Shown here in pieces: positions 1 to 64,000 of a stretch of DNA of 64,000 nucleotides. The notes beneath the pieces are model-generated. The model made no database searches and was not told where the DNA came from. It saw only the letters and a list, made by a program, of their open reading frames with translations. Numbering within the stretch: position 1 is the stretch's first letter; each line of letters starts with the position of its first letter. The stretch is from Basidiobolus meristosporus CBS 931.73. Its lineage: Eukaryota > Fungi > Basidiobolomycota. Location of the stretch: contig MCFE01000511.1 in the NCBI GenBank assembly GCA_002104905.1, forward strand, positions 784 through 64,783, read 5' to 3'. The translations under genes were made by a program, and so were the position numbers.

Positions 1-1830
1 GTCAAGCTAGATGGTCCCTGTTCCTGTCTAGCTTTAACTTTGCCATTATCTATAGACCAGTGAGACCAGGAAAACCTGATGCCTTGTCCAGAATGGTGGA
101 GTATTCCCTAGACAAAGGGGATGATGACTATCAGCAAATGAAATACCCTGTACTCAACAAAAGACACTTTGAATTCCTGGCAACCCAGTCCTCTAGTAGT
201 ATAACTCCTTTAACCCTTGAGGAAGTAAAGACCAGCAAAGTCACCAATTCCACAGCTGCTACAGTCAAAAAATATCTCAAGTCTCCCACTGACCCACCAC
301 CCAGGCTCCCAAACCTCCAACACCTACATCTAGTCAATGACATCATCTATTGCAAGCACCAACTATCTGTCCCAGACCCTGAGATCCAGTTGGATATTAT
401 AGGTTCTTGCCATGATTCTATGGCTGTATGACATTTAGGTACTGCCAAAACCATGAATGCAATCACAAGAGACTTCTGGTGGCCCAAGATGATATCCCTT
501 TTAAGGAGTACCTCCAGCTGTGAGATACATGTAATTGTGGAAAATCTGTCAGACACCAGCCATATGGACTTCTTTATCCCTTGCCAATCCCTGACCATTA
601 ATGATAGTCAATTTCAATGGACTTCATAACCCACCACCTAGAATTCAACCAAATTAACTCAGTTCTGGTAGTGGTGGATAGACACACAAAGATGGCTCAC
701 TTCATTCCCTGCAAGAATATTGATACCAAGAAAGCTGCCACTTAGTAATCAAGAGTATTTTCCTGCTCAATGGTATCCCAAGCTATATTGTATCTGATAG
801 AGGACCCCAGTTCATATCAAATTCTGGAAACACCTCATCCTCAGTCATATGGTCAGACTGAAATAATTAGCCAGATCCTTGAATAATGCTTCCAGTGCTG
901 TATCACCTATTGGCAAGACAACTGGACCAAGCTGCTAACACTTGCGGAATTTGCCTACAGCAATATATGTCATAGTGCAACTGGTCTCATCTCATTCTAT
1001 GCAAATGATGGTTTTCATCTGTAATTTAATATTTAGATTCCAACAACCCTGTGAGTCCCCCAGCAGTTAAACATGCATCAGCAATTTTAGAAATCCAAGA
1101 AGCACTCAGAATTAACTATCCTTAGCCCATGAGGGGTACAAGCAGTTGAAGTACATCAGATCATAACTTCACCACCTGGTAGACTAGGTTGGTTATTGCC
1201 CAAATGACCAAACTTGGGAACCTGCAACAAACATGACAAACTGCCAAGTTCTAGTTGCACTATCTCACCTGCCATACCCCAACAAGCCAAAGCCAAAAGC
1301 TTGAGGAAGGCCCCTCCAAAGAGGAGAATAGAGTCACAATTACGTGACATTCTTAACCTTTCATGATTTGTCTGAATCAAGCTGGTGAAGAAGTCCCAAT
1401 TCCTTATAGAGTGTTCTACTATATTCTAGCAACTTCTGGAAGGCTATAAGTCAATGTTACCTAATGGATCATTCTACAGAAGCTTCACTTTGTAATATAT
1501 GTTGATCATTACCATAGTTAATAATTACATACTACATGACGTAGTTACATGATCAGCTGACTCTTTGCATATCCCAATGTGATGTTCTAGTCTGTCTTTA
1601 ATATATTTCTATCTTGACACACTTACTGTGCCTCACCCCAGAACCCCATAAGTAATAGAGTTGTATCTCCCTCTTATGTACTCCTCAGTCTGATAAATAC
1701 AGGTCTTGAATCAACTGCCTTGCTGTAGAAATCTGCCTTGCCTTGTTGATCCATGCCTAGGTTCTTTCTTGGTCTTGCCTTGCCTAGTACTATTCCCCTA
1801 CCTTGAGTCTACTCATAACACCTACAGATT
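1..1830 (+). mobile_element. Degenerate Ty3/Gypsy chromovirus 3' half (RNase H end, integrase, chromodomain, probable LTR remnant)
   Basis: KPDALSR at ~69; integrase Zn-finger region HDSMAV*HLGTAKTMNAITRDFWWPKM; IVSDRGPQF near 790; chromodomain-like HLVD*VGYCPNDQTWEPATNM at ~1173-1235; many stops. The LTR boundary is uncertain. Confidence 0.75.
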
Positions 1831-2340
1831 CCATCTCATCCACCAGCAGGGAAATTCTGTTGATTAGACTTTTCACTTCTTCTCCTGGTAACATCTTTGT
1901 AGTGAAGAATTTCTGCCTAGAATGCACCATCTTGGCAGCCAAACATGACTAGTATGTGTCTTCCAGTGCCTTCCAGGCATTATTTGCTGGTTTTCCTCTT
2001 GAGCATTGAATTAGCAATTTGTCTTTGACATTAAGGAAACTGCAGGTAGAAGTACTTTGTTTTTTCTTGTGGTACTTTGATGATTCCTCCCCAACATTCT
2101 TAGGAGGAGATTATTCTCCCATGAGAACATCTGTAAAGCCTCTTACTTGCAGCATCATTTTCATCTTTACTTTCCACACTAGGAAACTCAATCCATCCAG
2201 CTTTTCAGTGGAGGGAAAAGTTCCAGTAATAATAGTAGTAGCCATTGCAGAGAATGACAGCTTGGGGCTCATAACCTGTTGCAAGAGTCTTTGAGAAATT
2301 AAAAGTGAATGGGATAACAAGTGGACCATGTGGTTTTCCC
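1826..2340 (-). mobile_element. Old Copia-A fragment (LTR end, PBS, start of gag)
   Basis: Reverse complement matches the Copia-A 5' region: PBS GGTTATGAGCCCC at ~2264-2276 and EKLDGLSFLVWKVKMKMML in ORF 2111..2491. Confidence 0.75.
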
Positions 2341-2449
2341 TCATTGATTTAATAGACTTGTTCTGTTGGATAGCGTCACATAGTGCCAGCCTATTTATAG
2401 TGCTGGATCTATCTGGCACTACATTTTCTACCATAATGCTCCAGACACA

Positions 2450-3300
2450 TTTCTCTCTGCAGATGCCTTCTTGCACAGATATACTGTGCATTGATAAGTA
2501 TCTTAACTACTTTACCTGCTGTGCTGTTTTCTCCTATATATGACTTTCATCTATATTTACCTAGCAACATGCTAAATCTCTTCAATTATCCAAACGTATG
2601 CTCTACCCTCACTCTGAAATGATTCATTATCTCACTGTAGAGCCTCTGCTTCCTGCCAAGCACAACATCCCTTGGCTACCTACAAGCTGTAGTACATTCT
2701 AGTATCTGACAATCCACTCCTATGTAAGCTAGGTCTGCCATACATTTCTCCCTCTACTGAATTCTGCATTAATCTCTACCCAAAGTGCTTTTTCACGCCT
2801 GCTTCCAGCAAATGGCCCATTAAACCAGATAATGTTACCCTCAATGTCAGACAGTGCTTGAAACTTCACACAGTGTGCCTTGTAGTTGTCAGAATAAAAG
2901 TACCTCTGCCCTCTAGAACGTCTGTTTATACTGATTGGGATGGTATCCAAAATACGCCTTATATGGAACCTGTTGCTGAACACTCTAAGATATGGATGTC
3001 TATTTGAGCTTATGAGCCTAGTATTCCAAGCTTACTCTAAGTCATTCATACCCTCTGCAATGTAGTTCTCCATTACTGTCAGCTGGGAATGAGAGCTTCT
3101 AGGACTTTTGTTGCCATGGATGATCAGATGAAACCTTGTGGTGCAATAGTTCTTGTAGTAGCAAAGAAGCTTAACCAGGGATCTCCTTGAGTTGCTTGAG
3201 GTAGACAGTCCACAGTACTTGGTATAGATCTCCTCTAGTGAGTCAAAAGGAAATCCAGAAATAGTGATGGGATTGATGAGAAAAGACCATTCTGATTATT
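2450..3300 (-). mobile_element. PIF/Harbinger-type DDE transposase relic
   Basis: Minus-strand motifs in the expected order: ILDTIPISINR (first D), QRYFYSDNYKAHCVKFQ...GNIIWFNGPFAGS, MADLAYIG (second D), RVRVEHTFG*LKRFSML (catalytic E). Frameshifts and stops are present. Confidence 0.8.
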
Positions 3301-3949
3301 AAGTCATAGCAAGATTGGTAGGTGATTGGGCTGAGGTTATTTGAGTCAATTTGGTGTAATCAGCCTTATTTATCTGATTTTCCATATATTAAGATCAGAT
3401 CCCCATCAATTGCCATGTATCCTATCATTATCTTGCAAAAATCAACCTCAAACAATGACTTGGTATCTTTATTGATGCTTTACTCACAAGTCTATAATCA
3501 GATAGGAAATCTGCCATTGATGCAATCTGACCTGTGTCAATGCAATCCCAGATGCATCATGCATAATATATGGAATATTCAACAATCACATCAGTTATTA
3601 TATATATTTCATATAAGACCAGGTTGATGCCAATGCACTACTGTATAAGTATCCAAATATGTCACTATGGTCTTTATACTAAGTTTCAACTCATCTTTAG
3701 TACATCCCAGACAAAACTCATCCCCCAGCTCAGAAGCTGGGTCTGGACCAGAGAAGTCAACATTGGATCCATTTGAGTTCTTGCTTTATGATTTTAGTAT
3801 GGCCCAAGTGTCAATGATGAGGCTTGATATAGATATTTGGGCACTACATATTAATCTAGCAGAACTAGATACCTCCACAAGTTGACAGAGACTGAAGAAC
3901 CTGAGTAGAAAGCTGTGGCATGAGCTCTACATCAAGATGCCAGCAGATA

Positions 3950-4820
3950 TATATAAGAAGATATTTAACAAAACAAGTATTGAAATCCAGAATGAGCTGA
4001 GAGCAAAGGGATTTGATGAGGAAGCCCCATAGGAGCAATATTGCATGCAATTTGCTCATTATGGGCCAGATGCGTCCATTTTGCCTCAACTTGGGGAACC
4101 AAACAGATTTTGAATGAGTTTTTTACCTACATTGACCAATGTTCTACATGATCTATTAATAGAGCTAGGTGGCTTCTAAGAGCAATAAGCACCGGACTCA
4201 TCCAGGCAACAGTTCCAAAGTATTGGACAGAGGGTAAATGAGTAACTTGAGAAAACACAAGGTGAGCTTCTAGTGGAAGAATGCAGTCTGCAAGCCGCAG
4301 TATCTAGATTGTGCCAGCATGCCTTGCTGGATTGATTACCATCCATTGCAACTTCAGCATGCTGGTGCACATCAGTCCAAACTATGCCAGCACCCTTCAC
4401 AAGAGCACCCCACATTGAGTCCATGTGTGGCGGGTCTACATGTGTGCTTCAGAGCAAAACCACCAGAACTTGCAAAACTGCTCATTTAGACACAAGTTAA
4501 AATGGTAAGTATCAGTGTAGCTTAAAGTGTGATTGGCGTTTATTTCCACTTACATTCAAGAAAAATATCCAAATATCTAGTTTTACCTGCCATAATGGTG
4601 GAATCCAATTGCACACATGATGCAAACATTAGAAGTTGCTGCAATCATCCATGCCAACCTCATTGCGTCAGATTGTGCCATAGTGTGCAAGATGGTCCTA
4701 CATGGTGCAAACTTGTCCAAGAGCAATCCTGCCTACCAGAAGCTACAATATTGCACCCAATAGCTCTTAGAGACTGCAGATTGAGCTGTGCACCCTGGCA
4801 AGGTATAATGTGATGGGTCT
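3950..4820 (+). repeat. Unclassified repeat X, copy 1 (decayed coding sequence, internal deletion)
   Basis: Aligns by eye with the reverse complement of 10630-12340 (shared peptide TSIEI.NELR..GFD.E); lacks about 0.85 kb that is present in copy 2. Confidence 0.75.
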
Positions 4821-37749: not shown

Positions 37750-40088
37750 TCAGAGGTTGACATTGGATTGCTCCAAGCTGGGTTGTCCAAATTGGTTGAG
37801 GTAGTTGTTCCAGTCGTTGAAGTCGATCTCTATTTGCAACAGGTTGAGGAGCGGCGCGTCGTGGTTGGATCCCGAGGTGGGATATCCTTGCATGCTATCA
37901 TTAGGAAGCAATGTTGCATCCTCACACATAGTTGGGAGTTGTGAGATAGAGGGTGGTGGCATTTGTTGTGGCGGATAGAAGTTCATCGTATCTTCAAGAA
38001 TACCATGTGGCATGAACGACGTGGGTTGTTGGAGCTGGGTGATAGGGTCATCTAGGCAGATGTTTCCGTTGCTTTCATTTGGGTTGAGCACAGGGCATTT
38101 ACCAGTGCATTCTTGGCTTGGGGCAGGTGGTTGTACATCTGGGTTAGCTTCGTCATAAAATGACTTCAAGCTTGTGACCTCAGAGAATGCAGGAAGAACC
38201 ACGACAGAGCTGGTATCGTTCCGGGGTGGTAGTTTCTCTGACACGTCAGGTGACAAGGCCACACTTGGGGGATCATAGAGAATGGGCTCTGCACCCATAT
38301 CCAAATCGGTAAGACCACGCACCTTTGCCAGGTCTTCCAAAATGGCCGAGACATGCCCTGCACCAAAAAACACATCACTGATCCGTTTCATGATAGCCAG
38401 GTTCACTGCGAAATTGTTCCTTGCCACCCGAGCAAGCTCCGAGTCCTTCGACATAGCATTGATCAAATGGATGGCGCTCGCAGAAAACATCAGCCCTGGC
38501 CTTGCCGGGTTGCCATGCAACATCCACTCCAGGGGAGTGTGGTAGGCTATCCATGTAATGCGGCTAGCTGCTCGCTGGCATATCAGCTGGGCAGGGTTGA
38601 TCTGCGTGCTAGCATTGTTATGTATCGGGATGAACGGTCGATTCAGCAGAATCACCGAGTACTGATAAAACGTGTGGAGCAAACTGCCATGTGGTGTGCT
38701 GATGGTACGGCTATGGTAGTCCACTCGGAACTCTGGTGGAATGGAGGCCTCCCAGTCACTCAGCGACTTGTTGAGCGACCATAGGTTACTGCTTGCCTTA
38801 ATTCGACCATCACCACGAAGAACATATATCGTCTGGATGATTTTACTGATGAGCATCGTCATGCGAACCGATTGTGCGAGGAACCGGATGCTCCTGTTGA
38901 TCTCTGGGCTGAGTTCTCCCTGGTTGAGCTCCAGGGGAAGCGTGGTGTCGAAGTCCTCCTCATTGATGGCTAACGGCTTCCCGCCCAGAGCGCTGTGGAA
39001 CCGATCGAATATCACACACCCCCACCAGGCAAGCTTGCGGTTCTGCTTCTCAATGGGGTCCAGATTCTCCGATTCAAGGTTTCGATGGAGCCCTAGGTCT
39101 TGCGCCATTCTGATCGCTATCCCTAAAAACAACCACCCGCCCATCGGGTTGAATGACATGAGCAGGAGACCCTGGATAGTGTGCAGATTAGAAGTGGTAT
39201 ATTGTTTGTCAAGTGCTGACTTGGCTTCCTTGAAAAAATACACAGTGGCTGAGCGAGAGATCTCTGGGGTTTTGAAGACAGTGAGCCCTTCCAGTACGCA
39301 ACCGACGGCAAATATTGCGTTCATCAGCACCTCCGGGATCTTTTCACCCGAATTCAGCCTCTCGAGAAACCTTGCCTTGTTGAAGACCGGGAAATACGGG
39401 TGTGAACGAGTGAAGTAAACCTCGATCAACTTGTCTTTGGTTTCTTGGCTTGGAAAGTTGGATTCCGGAAGTTTCGGTAGTTTCATGTTTTTTATATCAC
39501 ACATGAATTTCCTGAATACCCCGTTAACATGGTATTTTCCTCCCTCCAAGAGGTACATCCCGGAGCTGCTGCCGACATATCTGTACCCTGATCCGTCTGT
39601 GATGGTGAGCTTAGTGAGTTTGTCGTTCGTGTTTTCCATCTCTTCACTGTCCGAGCTTTCTTGTACGAAGGTCATCTAAAAAGAAGATGAGCATTAGTGT
39701 CCAAGGGAAGGGTGCTTATACATGACCAGCAGTTGGTTACCTCTCTTTTGTGGCTTGAAGTACCTGCGTTGCTTGGCAGACCTAAATCGGCTGCTGCTGC
39801 TGGTTCTGGGGAAGAGTGGGAGTCGTTGTCTAATAAGGTGGCAAGGGCAGCTTCGATCCGTTTAAGACGCCTTTCAAGAGCTTTGGAGTCCGATGCTTGT
39901 GGACCTCTCTTTTTCGGGACATCTAAGAAGGTGCACTCATATCCAAACATGGCACAGTTCGTACAAGCAGGCTTGAGAACGTCACATTTCACTTTCTTTC
40001 TACGACAAATATCGCAGGCACGCATGGTTTTTGATTTTGTCGGTGTACTCTCTACAGTATTCGACTCGTCTATTGTACCTGTTTTCAT
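37750..40088 (-). CDS. Zn2Cys6 fungal transcription factor with fungal-specific TF domain, copy 1 (intron 39676-39740)
   Basis: RACDICRRKKVKCDVLKPACTNCAMFGYEC; YVGSSSG; YFTRSHPYFPVFNK; GIAIRMAQDLGLHR; RKLAWWGCVIFDR. Confidence 0.95.
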
Positions 40089-58600: not shown

Positions 58601-58849
58601 TATAGATACATCTACTGATCACAAAGCTGAATAACATCTGGGATAACTAATGCTAATAACTAATCAGGGTAAACATCATATGGGGATAATACTGATAATA
58701 TGGGCAAAAGAAGAATGGGATAATACTGATAAGATAAAATATGGATAAGTATATCATAATGACTATATAAATAAACTTGTCTGTGGGAGGTATGTTTACC
58801 CTACCACAGCGTAAGATATATGAAAATTACATCATCAATCAACTGATGT

Positions 58850-59453
58850 CTTGGCAACTGCACAGTGGTTGGATAGATCTCAGATGACTAATCACCTGGG
58901 AAGGCTTGGCAGATAGGTTGATAACGTAATGACCATTTGAAAATAGATCAGGTGTGATAGCTAAAAATAGATTCTGAGGTGGGATAAAATAAACTGTAAC
59001 TGGAATCTGTTATGTTTGGGTTAGGGAAAATCAGTTAGGGTACTAGATTTTCTAACAGAGTAAAATTGGCTAAGTTTTAAATGTTGATGCACAACATCAC
59101 TTCCTTCCAGAAGAGGAGTTTTTTGATACCTTCTGGGTTCCTCTGTGGCTCCAATACTGATCAATAATGGCAACATCATCAAAGTTGGTGTAAGGTTCCC
59201 AGGTGTTGTGTTTGGCAGCATAGCCTTTCCACTTGACTAAATAAAGGCAATTTGGTTCTTCTCCTTCATGGTCCACAATAGCTTCAACTTCATAGGATTC
59301 CAAAGTTACTGGGTCTTGAGAAATAAGTTTGAGTGAAGAAGGTGAAAAGTTTTTGGGTAGCAGTGCTCCAGTGTTATCCTGAAGTACATAAGATCCTCCA
59401 GTAGTGCGTCTGACAACCTTGAATGGTCCTTCATACTTTGGGTCAAGCTTAGA
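58850..59453 (-). mobile_element. Ty3/Gypsy chromovirus 3' end (integrase GPF motif, chromodomain, PPT, start of 3' LTR), cut off at ~59453
   Basis: SKLDPKYEGPFKVVRRTTGGSYVL...YEVEAIVDHEG...YLVKWKGYAAKHNTWEPYTNFDD...YW; PPT GGAAGGAAG then TGTTG. Confidence 0.88.
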
Positions 59454-59475
59454 TTACCGGATTGGATCTAGTGTC

Positions 59476-59585
59476 TTAGGTTAGGGGAGGGAAAGTCACC
59501 AAGGTAGGTGAAATCTTTATTTGATTTCAGACAAGTCTAACTACAAATAAAGAAGCCAGCTGGGAATAGAAGATTCCCAAAGTAA
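59476..59585 (-). mobile_element. Telomeric retroelement 3'-end fragment F1 (~110 bp)
   Basis: Begins TTAGGTTAGGGG on + and carries the same GTCACC..GGTGAAATCTTTATT..AAAGAAGCCA terminal motif as the LINE. Confidence 0.75.
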
Positions 59586-59862
59586 AGGGTTAGGGGGGAG
59601 GAAAGTCACCAAGTGGTGAAATCTTTATTTACTTATGACAAGTATCTAAAGAAGCCATGTTAATCTGAAGTAATTCCTAGAAAGCTAGGTCTGAGAGATA
59701 TCTTCCTGGTAAGCCAGGTCTGAGAGTTGAGAAGCTGAGTGGTACTATATTTCCTAGTTAGCTAGGTCTGAGAGAGGTTTCCTGGAAAGCCAGGCCTGAG
59801 AAGTGAGAATCTGAATATATCTGAGCTAAGTTATACTGGTTTGCGGTAGCTGAATTGTGGCC
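59586..59862 (-). mobile_element. Telomeric retroelement unit F2 (~277 bp, hairpin-repeat body)
   Basis: Begins AGGGTTAGGGGGG on +; same terminal motif; four CCTRG-N4-CYAGG hairpins; no RT-like coding. Confidence 0.75.
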
Positions 59863-62800
59863 AGGGTTAGGGGGGGAGACAGTCACCAACAGGTGAAATC
59901 TTTATTTCAGTTGAAACAAAGAAGCCAGCGCTACTGCTGTAGCTTTGATACAAGAATGTGTAGCTGAGGGGAATTTGTAGGTAAGTTAATAAGAAGTGAT
60001 GATAGTTCTTCAGTGCTCAAGACACTGTTCAGTGGGAAGGGGGGTAGCAAGAGAGTTAAGAATGACTTGTGAACAACATTAATGAGGGGAATGTGATAAG
60101 GATTGATATTCATCATAAAGGGAGTGTGCTGCTGCAGATATTGCTGCCAAAGGTCTGTCAGGTACTTCTGGTAGGCCAGCTTGGGTTTTTCTGACTGCAG
60201 AATATAGTGAGCAAACTTCTTGACTTCAGGATCTCCAAGTATTGTTCTCCAGCAGGAGTCAGGTGTTGTGTGGTGTGTTCTCTTCCAGGCCTTAATCAAT
60301 GGGTTGTTGCAGTTGTGAAGTCTGAGGTATAATCTGGTTCTAAGGTAGAGAAGTCTGATCTTATAGGGCATAAACCCAAAAGCACCAAGAATAGCATGTC
60401 TGTAGGGGCATTCAGGCAAATGAGGCACCAAGGAGGTAATGCACCATACTGCAAACTTGTCAAGCTTAGTGCAGTCTCTAGAAGTAAGAGAGAGAAGTGG
60501 TAAGCCAAATTCCAGGACAGGGAAGACAAACTGCTTGAGTAGAAGGAGGCAGCTGGGAGCTGAAGTTGTAGGAGGAGTAACAGCCAGTAGCTTGTGGAGT
60601 GCCTGTCTTGCCAGGATAATTCTCTTCTTCAGGTGTGCTCCAGAGTCTAGTCCAGTAGGAAGGAAAGGAAAGCCAAGATATGTAGCAGAAACCTGAGCAG
60701 GTAGAGTGGAGTTCTCCAAGTTGATAGGAGAGCCCAAAGGTACTGTCTTTGCAATGGAAAGCTGGAGATTATTCTTCTGCAGATACTGCTGGATGGTCTG
60801 GGAGTCTTGTTGCACATTGGAGGAGGATATTCTGATGTCATCAGCAAAGAGAGTAACCAGGCAGTCAGCTGAGAGTCTTGGGAAATCATTCAGGAAGATG
60901 GCAAACAGTATAGGACCAAGCACAGAGCCTTGAACCACTCCATTAGGAACTGAGAACACAGCTGATTGCTCACTTGGGTGCAGAATTCTTGCTTGTGGAT
61001 CCAGAAACAGAGACCTGACAAGGAGGGTGAGAGAGGTACTGGAGAAGCATTGCAACTTGGACCAAAGCAGATTTCTGTCAACTTAATCAAAGGCCTTAGT
61101 AATATCAAACAGAACAGAGGGATACTTGCACTGGAGAGAGTGATCTTGGCTAAGTATGACTGCATATTCCAAGGAGAGGCCAGGAACAAAGCCAAACTGT
61201 GCAGGATGAAACTTGAGGGAGTCAGAGTAGAGCTCCTGAGCAAGCAGAAGCTCAAACACCTTTCTGCAGGTGGGCAGCAGAGATATTGGCCTGTAGGAGC
61301 TAGGATCCAGGTGCTTTCCTTTACCCTTGTACAGTGGCAGAACATTTGCAAAGGACCATTCCTCAGGAGTAGAAAGCTGGGCTGAGCATTGCTGAAACAG
61401 TGGAAGCAGAAGTGCAGACATGGCCTTGGTACCAGTCTTCAGAAGCTCATAAGAGATTGTGTCCACACCTGGAGCAGTAGAGTTGGGAAGCCTCTTGAGC
61501 ACATTATGGATTCTCCTTTGATCAAGTGCAAGTGGGATGGGCAGAGTCTTGAAGTCAGGATGAAAGCCAGGAGTTGAGTACTGCTTTGTAGAGAAGAAGA
61601 TGTTAGCCAGCTGTTCTGTTGAAGGTAACTTCCTGGAAGAGGGCCTCATTGCCCTGTAGAGTCTTGATACTGTTCTTGTTATAGAGTTGGAAGATTGCAG
61701 AGGCAAGGAACTCATAATATGATCCCAGAGCTGAGTATGCAGAGTGTGGTGAATTGCCTTGGAGTGGTGTATTGCTGTCAGGAGGAGTTTCTCTGTTTTT
61801 GGGTTAGGGAAACTCAGGTAGCTTTGTTGCAGGGCTGAAACAATGGATTCCCATTTTCTTGAGGTAACAGCAGTAGTCTTGCATGGCAGTGAGAGGGAGG
61901 CAGACACCAGAATCAGATGCTTCACAAAGAGCCAGGCATAGTTGAGATCATCTGGCAGAGAAAGTAGCAAACTGGCAAGCTTCAAGTAGTTCCCAAAGTC
62001 TTTCTTCTGATTCTTGGTAGCTTTGTGGGTGAGCACAGTAAGTTTTGGCAGCTTCTTCTTCACAACTGGTTGCATAGAAAGGGACCAGGCTGGATGGTCA
62101 GAGGCTCTCAAGGATCCTAGCTCAGCTCCAGAGAATTGCTTAACTTCATTCACAATGTAGAGGGCAGCAGCAGAAGGGCAGATCCAGTCAACACATCTTT
62201 TCTCAGATTGAGCACCTAGTGCTAGCAGGTGGCTTTCTCTCAGGAAGTTCAGTAGGAATGTAGACCTTGGCTTCATTCTTGCAGTCAGAGTAGTCTTGTT
62301 CTCAGGATGGGGAATGTTGAGATCTCCAAGCAAGATAACAGGTGTTAATATAGATTGTTGGTATTGCTGAACCTTCTGGCATATAACTTGCACTTCTTGA
62401 AGGGCAAGACTTGGAGGCAGATAGCAGAGCACCAGACTGATAGTTGGCAACTGGAGAGCAGCACAGTAAGGGGAGTAAAGAGGAACACAGAGCTGAGGAG
62501 TATTGATGGTAGAAGAGATGAAGCAGATAGAGGAGGTATTCTTTGTTCTAGGAGTAGAAAAGCAATATAGATTAGTCAAAAGTATAGAGGGTAGCTGGAC
62601 ATCAATCAAACACAGGAGGGAAAATCTTGAAAGAAGTCTTTCTAGAGTTGGTCTTGATGGCTGTATGCTGTTGCAGTTAAGCAACAGAACTTCAGGTAGT
62701 CAGGCAGAGGTTGTAGCTTCTTCAGAGGCAGCATTGATAATGTGACCTGCAGAGTCCCAGAGCTCTTCAAATGGTGCATCACTTAAGTCAGCAAGGAGGG

Positions 62801-63346
62801 AAATGGCATGATTCTTGAGGAAGTATGCCACATCATAGGAGGGGGCTTGTCTCTTGATGGCAGCAAAGAAAGACAGAATGGCAACATGGGCTGGAGGCTT
62901 GTTGAACAGTAGAGAGTCAGAGGATTCAGATTCTTCAGGCACTATCTTGAAGTCAGTTTTCAGCCAGTTAAGGTTCTTCTCCACAAAGGTAACAAATGGG
63001 TCAGCAATGTTTTGGTCTAGGATAACCTCCAGAATCTTCCCTTTTCTCCAGGCCAGGTTGACAATTCTTGAGAGCTGAATATTGCATGCCTTGAGTGCTT
63101 TCCTGATGTTGGAAATGGGAGTCCAGGGAACTTGCTTCAAGTACACCACAGTCCAGGTAGAAGCTGGTGGTAGGTTTGCTGGGGGCTTGTAAGTCCTTCT
63201 GTGTTGCAATGGAGCTGCAGTAGTCAGATTGGAGTCCACATTCTCAGTAGAAGGTTTTCTTGATGTGTCTTGCTGAATAGTACTGGAGCTGGATGTGCTG
63301 ATAATTCTTGCTAGAACCTTGCCTGCATAAGTCTGAGGTATAGCTG
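59863..63346 (-). mobile_element. Telomere-associated APE-type non-LTR retrotransposon (LINE), 5'-truncated, 3.5 kb
   Basis: ORF1, APE and RT in one frame; 3' end is C7-TAACCCT with no poly(A); no TSD; flanked distally by another copy. Confidence 0.93.
59931..62699 (-). CDS. LINE ORF2: apurinic-like endonuclease + reverse transcriptase (one internal TAA at 61083-61085; no ATG before the APE domain)
   Basis: APE: LLLNCNS, LCYLPP, ILLGDLN, RCVDWI, ASDH. RT: APGVDTI, YRPISLL, QFGF, DITKAFD*VD, GVVQGSVLGPILF, LFADD, YLG. ORF-track pieces 61083..62684 and 59931..61055 are the same frame. Confidence 0.92.
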
Positions 63347-63350
63347 AGGG
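62700..63350 (-). CDS. LINE ORF1 (5'-partial), putative RNA-binding protein
   Basis: The frame stays open from the telomeric junction at 63350 to TGA 62700-62702 (…TYAGKVLA…VYLKQVPWTPISNIRKALKACNIQLSRIVNLAWRKGKILEVIL…). Confidence 0.75.
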   Translation of the reverse strand, partial: PSAIPQTYAGKVLARIISTSSSSTIQQDTSRKPSTENVDSNLTTAAPLQHRRTYKPPANLPPASTWTVVYLKQVPWTPISNIRKALKACNIQLSRIVNLAWRKGKILEVILDQNIADPFVTFVEKNLNWLKTDFKIVPEESESSDSLLFNKPPAHVAILSFFAAIKRQAPSYDVAYFLKNHAISLLADLSDAPFEELWDSAGHIINAASEEATTSA

Positions 63351-63843
63351 TTAGGGGGGGAGACAGTCACCAACAGGTGAAATCTTTATTTCAGTTGAAA
63401 CAAAGAAGCCAGCGCTACTGTTGTAGCTTTGATACAAGAGTGTGTAGCTGAGGGGAATTTGTAGGTAAGCTAATAAGAAGTGATGATAGTTCTTCAGTGC
63501 TCAAGACACTGTTCAGTGGGAAGGGGGGTAGCAAGAGAGGTAAGAATGACTTGTGAACAACATTAATGAGGGGAATGTGATAAGGATTGATATTCATCAT
63601 AAAGGGAGTGTGCTGCTGCAGATATTGCTGCCAAAGGTCTGTCAAGTACTTCAGGTAGGCCAGCTTGGGTTTTTCTGACTGCAGAATATAGTGAGCAAAC
63701 TTCTTGACTTCAGGATCTCCAAGTATAGTTCTCCAGCAGGAGCCAGGTGTTGTGTGGTGTGTTCTCTTCCAGGCCTTAATCAGTGGGTTGTTGCAGTTGT
63801 GAAGTCTGAGGTATAATCTGGTTCTAAGGTAGAGAAGACTGAT
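63347..63843 (-). mobile_element. Terminal 0.5-kb 3' fragment of the same LINE family
   Basis: Matches 59863-60359 with about 10 substitutions; same AGGGTTAGGGGGGGAGAC junction. Confidence 0.95.
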
Positions 63844-64000
63844 TTAGGGTTAGGGTTAGGGTTAGGGTTAGGGTTAGGGTTAGGGTTAGGGTTAGGGTTA
63901 GGTTAGGGTTAGGGTTAGGGTTAGGGTTAGGGTTAGGGTTAGGGTTAGGGTTAGGTTAGGGTTAGGGTTAGGGTTAGGGTTAGGGTTAGGTTAGGGTTAG
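63844..64000 (+). repeat. Telomere (TTAGGG)n, G-rich strand 5'->3' (right chromosome end)
   Basis: About 26 repeats running to the window end, with three TTAGG variants. Confidence 0.98.

What the first reader, a model, noticed from the sequence alone, without database searches (positions are those of the whole stretch)
59476..64000. Head-to-tail array of an APE-type LINE that appears to target or extend the telomere
Seen: four retroelement units (about 110, 277, 3480 and 500 bp), all on the minus strand, so 3' ends face the centromere and truncated 5' ends face the telomere. Each starts at a telomeric-repeat junction, none has a TSD, and the last is capped by (TTAGGG)n. Known: this polarity is what reverse transcription primed from the G-strand 3'-OH produces, as in Drosophila HeT-A/TART, Bombyx TRAS and telomeric Penelope-like Athena/Coprina. 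The fungal telomeric non-LTR elements I know (MoTeR, Cnl1) are REL-endonuclease types, whereas this one has APE plus a LINE RT. Inference: a possibly undescribed telomere-specific LINE family in an early-diverging fungus that co-maintains chromosome ends alongside telomerase-type repeats.
Basis: partly seen in the sequence, partly recalled or inferred. Interest (0 to 1): 0.92.

Follow-up and report, generated by a model that had tools for sequence, protein, structure and literature searches.

The report
Telomere-tailed LINE stack at chromosome end
The last 4.5 kb of this Basidiobolus meristosporus contig is a one-way stack of four shortened jumping-gene copies that end in the chromosome-cap repeat instead of poly(A); it belongs to a set of about 2,000 copies, seen so far only at contig ends, of a type I found in no paper on fungi.

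Summary
Four minus-strand units (108, 277, 3484 and 497 nt) each begin at a (G)GGTTAGGG junction, and a 157-nt (TTAGGG)n tract caps them at the true contig end.

One correction: only units 3 and 4 are the LINE. Unit 1 is a fragment of family B. Unit 2 is the 3' half of a 525-nt SINE-like family A. Both share only the LINE's 3' module.

The full-length LINE is 4573 bp:
- ORF1 has a zinc ribbon, a coiled coil and an RRM-like domain.
- A conserved in-frame UGA-CUN separates ORF1 from ORF2.
- ORF2 carries a divergent AP endonuclease, confirmed by fold, and an RT.

The tail has two hairpins supported by covariation, then a C-run, then UAACCC. The tail motif occurs 2,077 times in the genome. In every contig sampled its orientation matches the adjacent telomere or contig end. 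All of about 80 parsed units keep their 3' end, and none is nested. Junctions usually hold one TTAGGG. A TERT gene is present.

Most likely a telomeric G-strand 3'-OH, paired to the CCCUAA tail, primes the cDNA. Whether that end is natural or cut by the endonuclease is unresolved.

Known fungal telomeric non-LTR elements (MoTeR, Cnl1, FoTeR) use a REL endonuclease. This scan has already flagged the same system on other contigs of this genome.

The parts
59476..59487 (+). Innermost junction: TTAGGTTAGGG joins non-array DNA (a Ty3-like fragment) to the first unit
59478..59585 (-). Unit 1: 3'-terminal ~107 nt of partner family B, 5'-truncated, with the shared 3' module
   Evidence: 99-100% identical to copies in L018, L017, L009
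59586..59862 (-). Unit 2: 3' 277 nt of the 525-nt non-coding family A. Full copies have tRNA-like A and B boxes. It contains four 28-nt internal repeats.
   Evidence: (D4)
59863..63346 (-). Unit 3: LINE copy lacking its first ~1090 nt. It matches 1085-4567 of the 4567-nt L012 reference used; the full element is 4573 bp.
   Evidence: 99.0% identical to the L012 copy
59863..59877 (-). Terminus of unit 3: C-run followed by UAACCC(U), in the sense orientation
59883..59896 (-). 3' hairpin H2: 5 bp, UCACC/GGUGA, with a loop that varies between families
59899..59922 (-). 3' hairpin H1: 10 bp, includes the AAUAAAGA block
59931..62699 (-). ORF2, 922 codons: APE then RT. This copy has a premature TAA at codon 539.
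61083..61085 (-). Copy-specific nonsense codon. The window reads AFD*V where intact copies read AFDSV.
60666..61304 (-). RT core (Pfam RVT_1, ORF2 residues 466-678, FADD at 618-621)
61995..62699 (-). AP-endonuclease-like domain (ORF2 residues 1-235). Motifs: LLLNCNS, LIDV, GDLN, VDW, SDH.
62700..62702 (-). In-frame UGA ending ORF1, followed by CUA. ORF2 continues in the same frame with no AUG.
62703..63346 (-). C-terminal 214 codons of ORF1, truncated at the 5' end
62943..63167 (-). RRM-like beta-alpha-beta-beta-alpha-beta domain of ORF1 (residues 357-431)
   Evidence: best Z 8.2, many RRMs at Z 6-7; Foldseek not significant
63347..63843 (-). Unit 4: outermost LINE copy, 3' 497 nt only
   Evidence: (D2, 98%)
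63844..64000 (+). Terminal (TTAGGG)n at the contig end, G-strand running 5'->3' outward

Best explanation
This is the end of a B. meristosporus chromosome, built by repeated addition of telomere-specialised non-LTR retroelements.

The autonomous element is a 4573-bp LINE. It has a 5' UTR and an ORF1 (zinc ribbon, coiled coil, RRM-like domain). An in-frame UGA separates ORF1 from ORF2 (AP-endonuclease plus RT).

The LINE and several non-coding partner families end in the same 3' module: two hairpins, a C-run and one or two UAACCC units. There is no poly(A).

Proposed mechanism:
1. ORF2p recognises the hairpin module.
2. The terminal CCCUAA of the RNA pairs with a telomeric G-strand ...TTAGGG-3'OH.
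3. That 3'-OH primes the cDNA.
4. Each copy therefore lies with its 3' end toward the centromere and its 5' end, often truncated, outward.
5. The next element or telomerase then extends that end.

Shown: anatomy, polarity, junction content, restriction to telomeres in the sampled data, recent activity, and presence of TERT.

Inferred: the priming step, recognition of the hairpins, and UGA readthrough.

Unresolved: whether the 3'-OH is a natural or eroded chromosome end (possibly with template jumping between RNAs) or a nick made by the APE domain. I lean about 55:45 toward end-priming.
For: Anatomy:
- 15 of 30 fetched copies are 4573 bp with a common 5' end. Several have both ORFs open.
- RVT_1 scores 1.6e-25, and L1 ORF2p is the best solved relative at 2e-21.
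- The N-terminal domain folds as an AP endonuclease: APE1/ExoA 1e-9, TRAS1 EN 1.6e-8. Its active-site motifs are kept across families only 48-62% identical.

Targeting:
- The tail 16-mer occurs 1856 times forward and 221 reverse, against 5 and 3 for the control. (TTAGGG)5 occurs 7145 forward and 73 reverse.
- On C1, C2, C21 and C22 every tail lies within 22 kb of the terminal tract. The reverse-strand tails on C27 and C80 lie within about 25 kb of the contig starts (1364-24745).
- All 30 LINE loci are in one-way arrays or at contig ends.
- 16 lone TTAGGG hexamers inside the window carry no insertion.

Terminal addition:
- About 80 units all keep their 3' end, are colinear and are never nested.
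- Of 73 junctions, 46 have exactly one TTAGGG, 17 have two, 5 have three to seven, and 5 have only 3-5 nt of microhomology.
- Innermost LINE fragments are 88-98% identical to the reference; outer ones are about 99%.

3' module:
- 15 base pairs, 97% paired. 4 pairs show compensatory changes, and 0 of 500 shuffles reach the observed values.
- The module is shared by the LINE and its partners.

Independent support:
- The same tail and head-to-tail junctions occur in contigs from other samples.
- Short-read unitigs show dozens of different junctions between a truncation point and a tail start.
- A TERT RBD is found on C935.
Against: - No RNA data exist, so the RNA 3' end is inferred from DNA copies only.
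- The APE domain is conserved. This argues that cutting matters and weakens a pure end-priming model.
- The genome-wide map is incomplete. Rare interstitial copies cannot be excluded.
- The reverse-strand share of tails (10.6%) exceeds that of telomere tracts (1%). I could not explain this.
- The age gradient rests on identity to one reference copy in a few loci.
Confidence: 0.8

Rival explanations
1. TRAS/SART-like mechanism. The APE domain nicks the G-strand inside duplex telomeric repeats, either in the terminal tract or at the TTAGGG between stacked units. Ordinary target-primed reverse transcription then inserts the element internally. The natural chromosome end is not used.
For: The APE fold and its catalytic motifs are conserved across diverged families. 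TRAS1 EN is among the structural matches. TRAS1 has the same polarity relative to the telomere (established knowledge, not tested here). A TTAGGG target duplication would be invisible.
Against: If nicks fell anywhere in a tract of 25-40 repeats, the number of proximal repeats should vary widely. Instead 63 of 73 junctions have one or two, and 5 have less than one. No unit is interrupted by another. Inner copies look older than outer ones. Lone TTAGGG hexamers elsewhere are not hit.
Confidence: 0.35
2. An ordinary, untargeted LINE that piled up in subtelomeres through recombination, segmental duplication or weak selection. The telomeric hexamers would be incidental.
For: Subtelomeres commonly collect repeats. 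The region just inside the array (58808-59475) is itself repeated at other ends.
Against: 5' truncation points and neighbouring units differ from locus to locus, so the copies are independent events. 68 of 73 3' ends abut at least one full TTAGGG and the other 5 abut 3-5 nt of it. There is no poly(A) and no target-site duplication. Orientation matches the telomere. None lies in the other 59 kb of the window.
Confidence: 0.03
3. Assembly artefact: long-read chimeras or mis-joined repeats at contig ends.
For: Nearly all contigs are oriented telomere-right, which is an oddity of this assembly. Some contigs stop inside an element.
Against: The same tail-to-next-element junctions are seen in short-read unitigs of the sample. 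They also occur in independent assemblies from other samples.
Confidence: 0.01

Closest known systems
TRAS1 / SART1 (R1 clade, Bombyx and other insects)
   Same: APE-type LINEs specific for telomeric repeats that coexist with telomerase-type repeats. TRAS1 has the same polarity. The TRAS1 endonuclease is a structural match to this APE domain. PMC10088271 lists them as telomere-associated.
   Different: TRAS and SART have poly(A) tails and, from my own knowledge, CCHC knuckles in ORF1. They also sit inside long repeat tracts. Here the tail is one or two telomere units, ORF1 has a zinc ribbon, coiled coil and RRM-like domain, and the units abut each other. Clade membership was not tested.
HeT-A / TART / TAHRE (Jockey clade, Drosophila)
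   Same: Head-to-tail one-way arrays at chromosome ends, with 5' ends outward and variable 5' truncation, and with non-autonomous members relying on an autonomous RT.
   Different: Drosophila lacks telomerase and the elements end in poly(A). Here TERT is present, TTAGGG caps the array, and the tail imitates the telomere.
MoTeR1, Cnl1, FoTeR (fungal telomeric non-LTR elements, CRE clade)
   Same: Fungal non-LTR elements found in or next to TTAGGG telomeres (PMC12857005).
   Different: Those encode a single ORF with the RT followed by a REL (PD-(D/E)XK) endonuclease. This element has an N-terminal APE, no REL domain and a separate ORF1.
Endonuclease-deficient Penelope-like elements (Athena, Coprina)
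   Same: A 3' end carrying reverse-complement telomere repeats, 5' truncation, 3' end toward the centromere, and a proposed pairing with the G-overhang.
   Different: Different RT class and no endonuclease. Here there is a LINE-type RT (closest solved relative L1 ORF2p) plus a conserved APE.
Stringent-type LINE/SINE pairs (UnaL2/UnaSINE1, ZfL2; PMC4176376)
   Same: The LINE and its SINEs share a 3' stem-loop followed by short terminal repeats in place of poly(A).
   Different: Here the terminal repeat is the telomere unit and insertion is confined to chromosome ends.
Zepp (Chlorella), Tx1-1_ACar (anole), GilM/GilT (Giardia)
   Same: LINEs that accumulate at telomeres in other eukaryotic lineages (PMC10088271).
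   Different: Other clades and hosts. From my own knowledge, the Zepp and Tx1 types end in poly(A). I found no report of SINE partners for them.

Membership tests
APE-type non-LTR retrotransposon (LINE) | AP-endonuclease-like domain N-terminal to the RT | tested here: met
   AF2 model with pLDDT 73. Foldseek gives APE1/ExoA at 1e-9 and TRAS1 EN at 1.6e-8. Pfam matches cover only the C-terminal half and fall below threshold. The motifs N8/N10, D32, GD126xN128, D171 and SD201H202 are conserved.
APE-type non-LTR retrotransposon (LINE) | LINE-type reverse transcriptase with the YxDD box | tested here: met
   RVT_1 at 1.6e-25. L1 ORF2p at 2e-21 with the family profile. FADD at residues 618-621.
APE-type non-LTR retrotransposon (LINE) | No LTRs, variable 5' truncation, intact 3' ends | tested here: met
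APE-type non-LTR retrotransposon (LINE) | Target-site duplication flanking insertions | tested here: not met
   None at any junction. This is expected for terminal addition, or the duplication is hidden if the target is TTAGGG.
Named LINE clade (L1, Tx1, R1, Jockey, CR1, RTE, Tad, I) | Placement in an RT phylogeny with curated clade references | not testable with these tools
   No clade reference sequences could be fetched. Beyond its own small family (and one multi-stretch Artemia gene model), the best hits are generic RTs at 280 bits or less. The nearest named neighbours are arthropod 'X-element'- or 'jockey'-like proteins at 27-31% identity over the RT only. No RNase H, zf-RVT or CCHC domain was found.
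TRAS/SART-type telomeric LINE | Poly(A) tail and insertion at a fixed site within long telomeric tracts | tested here: not met
   No poly(A). Junctions hold mostly one TTAGGG.
TRAS/SART-type telomeric LINE | Endonuclease that cuts telomeric repeats specifically | not testable with these tools
   Needs a nicking assay.
MoTeR/Cnl1/FoTeR (CRE clade) | REL (CCHC plus PD-(D/E)XK) endonuclease C-terminal to the RT | tested here: not met
   No such domain was found in Pfam or in the alignment. The APE lies at the N-terminus. The REL definition is taken from PMC12857005.
Drosophila-type retrotransposon telomere | Absence of telomerase and of short telomeric repeats | tested here: not met
   Telomerase_RBD scores above its cut-off on C935. 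The array is capped by (TTAGGG)n.
Stringent-type LINE-SINE partnership | 3' stem-loop and terminal repeat shared by the LINE and non-coding partners | tested here: met
   Two hairpins, with 4 of 15 pairs compensatory and 0 of 500 shuffles reaching the observed values. The module is present in the LINE and in families A to D. Recognition by ORF2p was not tested.
L1-like (type II) ORF1p | Coiled coil followed by an RRM and a C-terminal domain | tested here: inconclusive
   Weak coiled-coil hits at residues 155-215. RRM-like topology with VIA Z of 8.2 to 6 against many RRMs. Foldseek found nothing at E<=0.001, and there is no Transposase_22 hit.

The most novel reading that the evidence does not exclude
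The LINE/SINE stacks are a working second system for building chromosome ends, running beside telomerase. Under this reading, RNAs ending in CCCUAA are copied directly onto eroded or freshly broken ends. That would heal breaks and could have allowed this fungus to carry a very large number of small chromosomes, as the hundreds of telomere-bearing contigs suggest. The many-chromosome karyotype is my inference from the assembly, not something tested here.
Probability: 0.3. Interest if true: 0.85.

Novelty: new variant of a known kind. Interest (0 to 1): 0.7.

Why it matters
Retrotransposons that specialise on telomeres have arisen only a handful of times, and they bear on how telomerase and retroelements are related.

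This case differs from the known ones in four ways:
- It adds an early-diverging fungus to the list.
- It is the first APE-type example in fungi that I could find.
- Its tail imitates the telomere instead of being poly(A).
- It comes with a set of non-coding passengers that share a structured recognition module.

There are about 2,000 copies at 99% identity, with intact ORFs, and telomerase is still present. The competition or cooperation between the two end-building systems could therefore be tested in a culturable organism.

Tried and rejected
- **Genome tools.** I could not map all 2,077 tails, count full-length copies, or fetch contig ends.
- **RNA evidence.** No RNA run holds the element. 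The laid runs are contigs only, so there is no information on transcripts or RNA 3' ends.
- **APE by sequence.** PDB sequence searches, with a single sequence and with a profile, did not detect the APE domain. Only the fold search did.
- **ORF1.** No Pfam family passed threshold. Foldseek found nothing significant.
- **Family A head.** Rfam and ARAGORN found nothing in the window or in the family A head. The A and B boxes were seen by eye only.
- **Clade naming.** Cluster names, the protein atlas and the representative library gave no usable clade label. The 572-bit Artemia hit is a multi-stretch gene model, not a close relative.
- **Alternative genetic code.** I considered a ciliate-type code for the two in-frame stops and rejected it. 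The UGA is the native end of ORF1 in every copy, and the TAA is specific to this copy.
- **Penelope-like element.** Rejected on the RT type and the presence of an APE.
- **G-quadruplex motifs.** None with loops of 7 nt or less on either strand, although G-triplets are 65 against 9.


Full report
**What is in the window.** The + strand from 59476 to 64000 holds four copies of a conserved terminus at 59478, 59586, 59863 and 63347. On the + strand each reads (G)GGTTAGGG, a G-run, AG..GTCACCAA..GGTGAAATCTTTATTT. The last unit ends at 63843. From there 157 nt of (TTAGGG)n run to the window end. That end is also the end of the 64,783-bp contig. The tail 16-mer is absent from the other 59 kb of the window. 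The organism is Basidiobolus meristosporus CBS 931.73: a Zn2Cys6 gene in the window is 100% identical to its protein on a contig of exactly this length.

**The units are not all one element.** Units 3 (3484 nt) and 4 (497 nt) are about 99% identical to a LINE that has at least 39 near-identical copies on other contigs. Unit 2 is the 3' 277 nt of a 525-nt non-coding family A. The 5' end of full family A copies shows tRNA-like A and B boxes by eye, but ARAGORN and Rfam do not call it. Unit 1 is the last 107 nt of a third family, B. All three share only the 3' module of about 70 nt.

**The full-length LINE.** In 15 of 30 fetched loci the copy runs 4573 bp to a common 5' end.
- The 5' UTR is about 195 nt. 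Its first 102 nt are tandemly repeated up to about five times in some copies, and it contains CCCTAACCCTAA.
- ORF1 has 511 codons: a CxxC...CxC zinc ribbon, a coiled-coil region and a conserved C-terminal part.
- A single UGA ends ORF1.
- ORF2 follows in the same frame with 922 codons and no AUG.

The 15 full copies are 98.5-99.7% identical, and several have both ORFs open. This indicates recent activity. The window copy lacks its first ~1090 nt and carries one nonsense codon, at 61083-61085, which reads AFD*V where intact copies read AFDSV. It has no indels. It is a dead copy.

**The enzymes.**
- The RT is clear: RVT_1 at 1.6e-25, L1 ORF2p at 2e-21 with a family profile, and a FADD box.
- The endonuclease is very divergent. 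Pfam sees only its C-terminal half below threshold, and PDB sequence searches miss it.
- A model of residues 1-250 (pLDDT 73) matches AP endonucleases at 1e-9 and the TRAS1 endonuclease at 1.6e-8.
- The motifs LLLNCNS, LIDV, GDLN, VDW and SDH are kept in sister families only 48-62% identical. The domain is therefore under selection. The first acidic residue is Asp rather than the usual Glu.
- ORF1 residues 357-431 fold as beta-alpha-beta-beta-alpha-beta. They match many RRMs at Z 6-8, but Foldseek found nothing significant. I call the domain RRM-like only.

**The 3' module.** The last 65 nt or so fold into a 10-bp hairpin that includes the AAUAAAGA block and a 5-bp hairpin (UCACC/GGUGA). A C-run of 4-11 and UAACCC follow. 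I tested 13 tails from the LINE, families A to D and related elements from other samples:
- 97% of cells pair.
- 4 of 15 pairs show changes on both sides.
- No shuffle out of 500 reaches the observed values.
- Sliding the partners drops pairing to 40-51%.
- Loops differ in sequence and length while the stems hold.

A structured 3' end followed by a short repeat, shared by a LINE and its non-coding partners, is the layout of 'stringent' LINE/SINE pairs (PMC4176376).

**Genome-wide behaviour.**
- The tail 16-mer occurs 1856 times forward and 221 reverse (control 5 and 3). (TTAGGG)5 occurs 7145 forward and 73 reverse, so the contigs are almost all oriented telomere-right.
- In the contigs where both lists overlap (C1, C2, C21, C22), every tail lies within 22 kb of the terminal tract.
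- The two listed contigs with reverse-strand tails (C27, C80) have them within about 25 kb of the contig start.
- All 30 LINE loci lie in one-way arrays or at contig ends. Of the 14 that reach a contig end, 10 end in TTAGGG repeats and 4 stop inside an element.
- About 80 units parsed from these loci are all colinear with their family and complete at the 3' end. None is interrupted by another.
- Sixteen lone TTAGGG hexamers in the interior of the window carry nothing.

**Junctions.** I examined 73 junctions outside the window:
- 46 have exactly one perfect TTAGGG against the G-run.
- 17 have two.
- 5 have three to seven.
- 5 have only 3-5 nt that overlap the truncated neighbour.

Full-length 5' ends are followed directly by GGTTAGGG or by a few extra bases. 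Innermost LINE fragments are 88-98% identical to the reference and outer ones about 99%. This fits youngest-outermost addition, although it rests on few loci.

**Independent support.**
- Contigs assembled from other public samples encode ORF2 proteins 48-80% identical. They show the same tail, the same head-to-tail joins and the same ORF1-UGA-CUN-ORF2 arrangement.
- Short-read unitigs of the sequenced sample show dozens of different joints from internal LINE positions to tail starts, with 0-13 letters between.
- A Telomerase_RBD match above its cut-off lies on contig C935.

**Mechanism.** The simplest reading is that the RNA's terminal CCCUAA pairs with a G-strand ...TTAGGG-3'OH, which primes the cDNA. 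This explains four features: the polarity, the obligatory hexamer, the lack of poly(A) and the lack of target-site duplications.

Two sources for the 3'-OH remain possible:
- **A short or eroded natural end,** possibly with template jumping from one RNA to the next. Supporting this: the predominance of a single repeat at junctions, the sub-hexamer microhomology junctions, the absence of nesting and the age gradient.
- **An APE nick,** as in TRAS1. Supporting this: the conserved APE domain.

I put these at about 55:45. Neither can be settled without RNA data or biochemistry.

[quoted passage not shown] The fungal ones (MoTeR1, Cnl1, FoTeR) are REL-endonuclease elements of the CRE group (PMC12857005). 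I found no paper on telomeric retroelements in Basidiobolus or other early-diverging fungi, and none on a telomere-specific SINE. The library holds open-access papers only.

The clade of this LINE is unresolved. Beyond its own small family (and one multi-stretch Artemia gene model), the best hits are generic RTs at 280 bits or less. The nearest named neighbours are arthropod Jockey- or X-element-like proteins at about 30% identity over the RT.

**Verdict.** It is a new variant of a known kind. This scan has already flagged the same system on other contigs of this genome, so this window is one more instance of it.

Noticed in passing
window 62700-62702 (and L033-L041): ORF1 ends in an in-frame UGA followed by CUN, and the APE motif starts 4-5 codons later in the same frame, usually with no AUG. 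This is conserved in six families 48-80% identical. It suggests that ORF2 is made as an ORF1-ORF2 fusion by stop-codon readthrough. The four papers that matched my search terms were not opened, so I know of no report of this for LINEs.
   Followed up: partly
window 59863-63346 versus 24001-54000: CpG is almost absent from the LINE (observed/expected 0.01-0.04). The same ratio is 0.78 in the gene-rich part of the window and 0.14-0.19 in the other repeat-rich parts, while GpC is normal. This looks like long-term CpG methylation and deamination aimed at repeats.
   Followed up: partly
L007, L020, L025 (5' ends of full-length copies): The first 102 nt of the LINE's 5' UTR is tandemly repeated 2 to about 5 times in some copies. 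The UTR also contains CCCTAACCCTAA. This may be a promoter monomer or a buffer against erosion.
   Followed up: no
window 61802-61809: GGTTAGGG lies inside ORF2 on the + strand, so the sense strand reads CCCTAACC within TTCCCTAACCCA. These codons encode the invariant FPNP motif. A CCCTAA lies at a matching distance into ORF2 in 8 of 10 related contigs from other samples; codon-level correspondence was not checked.
   Followed up: no
window 58808-59475: The DNA just inside the array includes a chromodomain ORF (59097-59303, minus strand, Pfam Chromo 1.2e-15). The region recurs at 97% identity at other chromosome ends (L013, L024). It also forms the middle of a chimeric 935-nt tailed element, 'E'.
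   Followed up: partly
L012 1500-6071 (full LINE): There is strong strand asymmetry. The strand continuous with the telomeric G-strand has GC skew +0.24 and 65 G-triplets, against 9 on the sense strand. No canonical G4 motif is present.
   Followed up: partly
whole assembly: Nearly all telomere-bearing contigs are oriented with the telomere on the right (7145 against 73). The tail motif is reverse-strand in 10.6% of cases, more than the telomere ratio predicts.
   Followed up: no
L010 960-1510 (family A, full copy): The head of family A carries TAGCCTTGTGG and GGTTCAAATCC, which resemble Pol III A and B boxes, with CCCTAACCC between them. ARAGORN and Rfam do not call a tRNA.
   Followed up: partly
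run X5: A 2022 run labelled as another organism holds two short contigs (258 and 183 nt) about 99% identical to the LINE's ORF2, at very low depth.
   Followed up: no
window 37750-39675: A Zn2Cys6 transcription factor gene has an 88% identical paralogue on the same contig.
   Followed up: no
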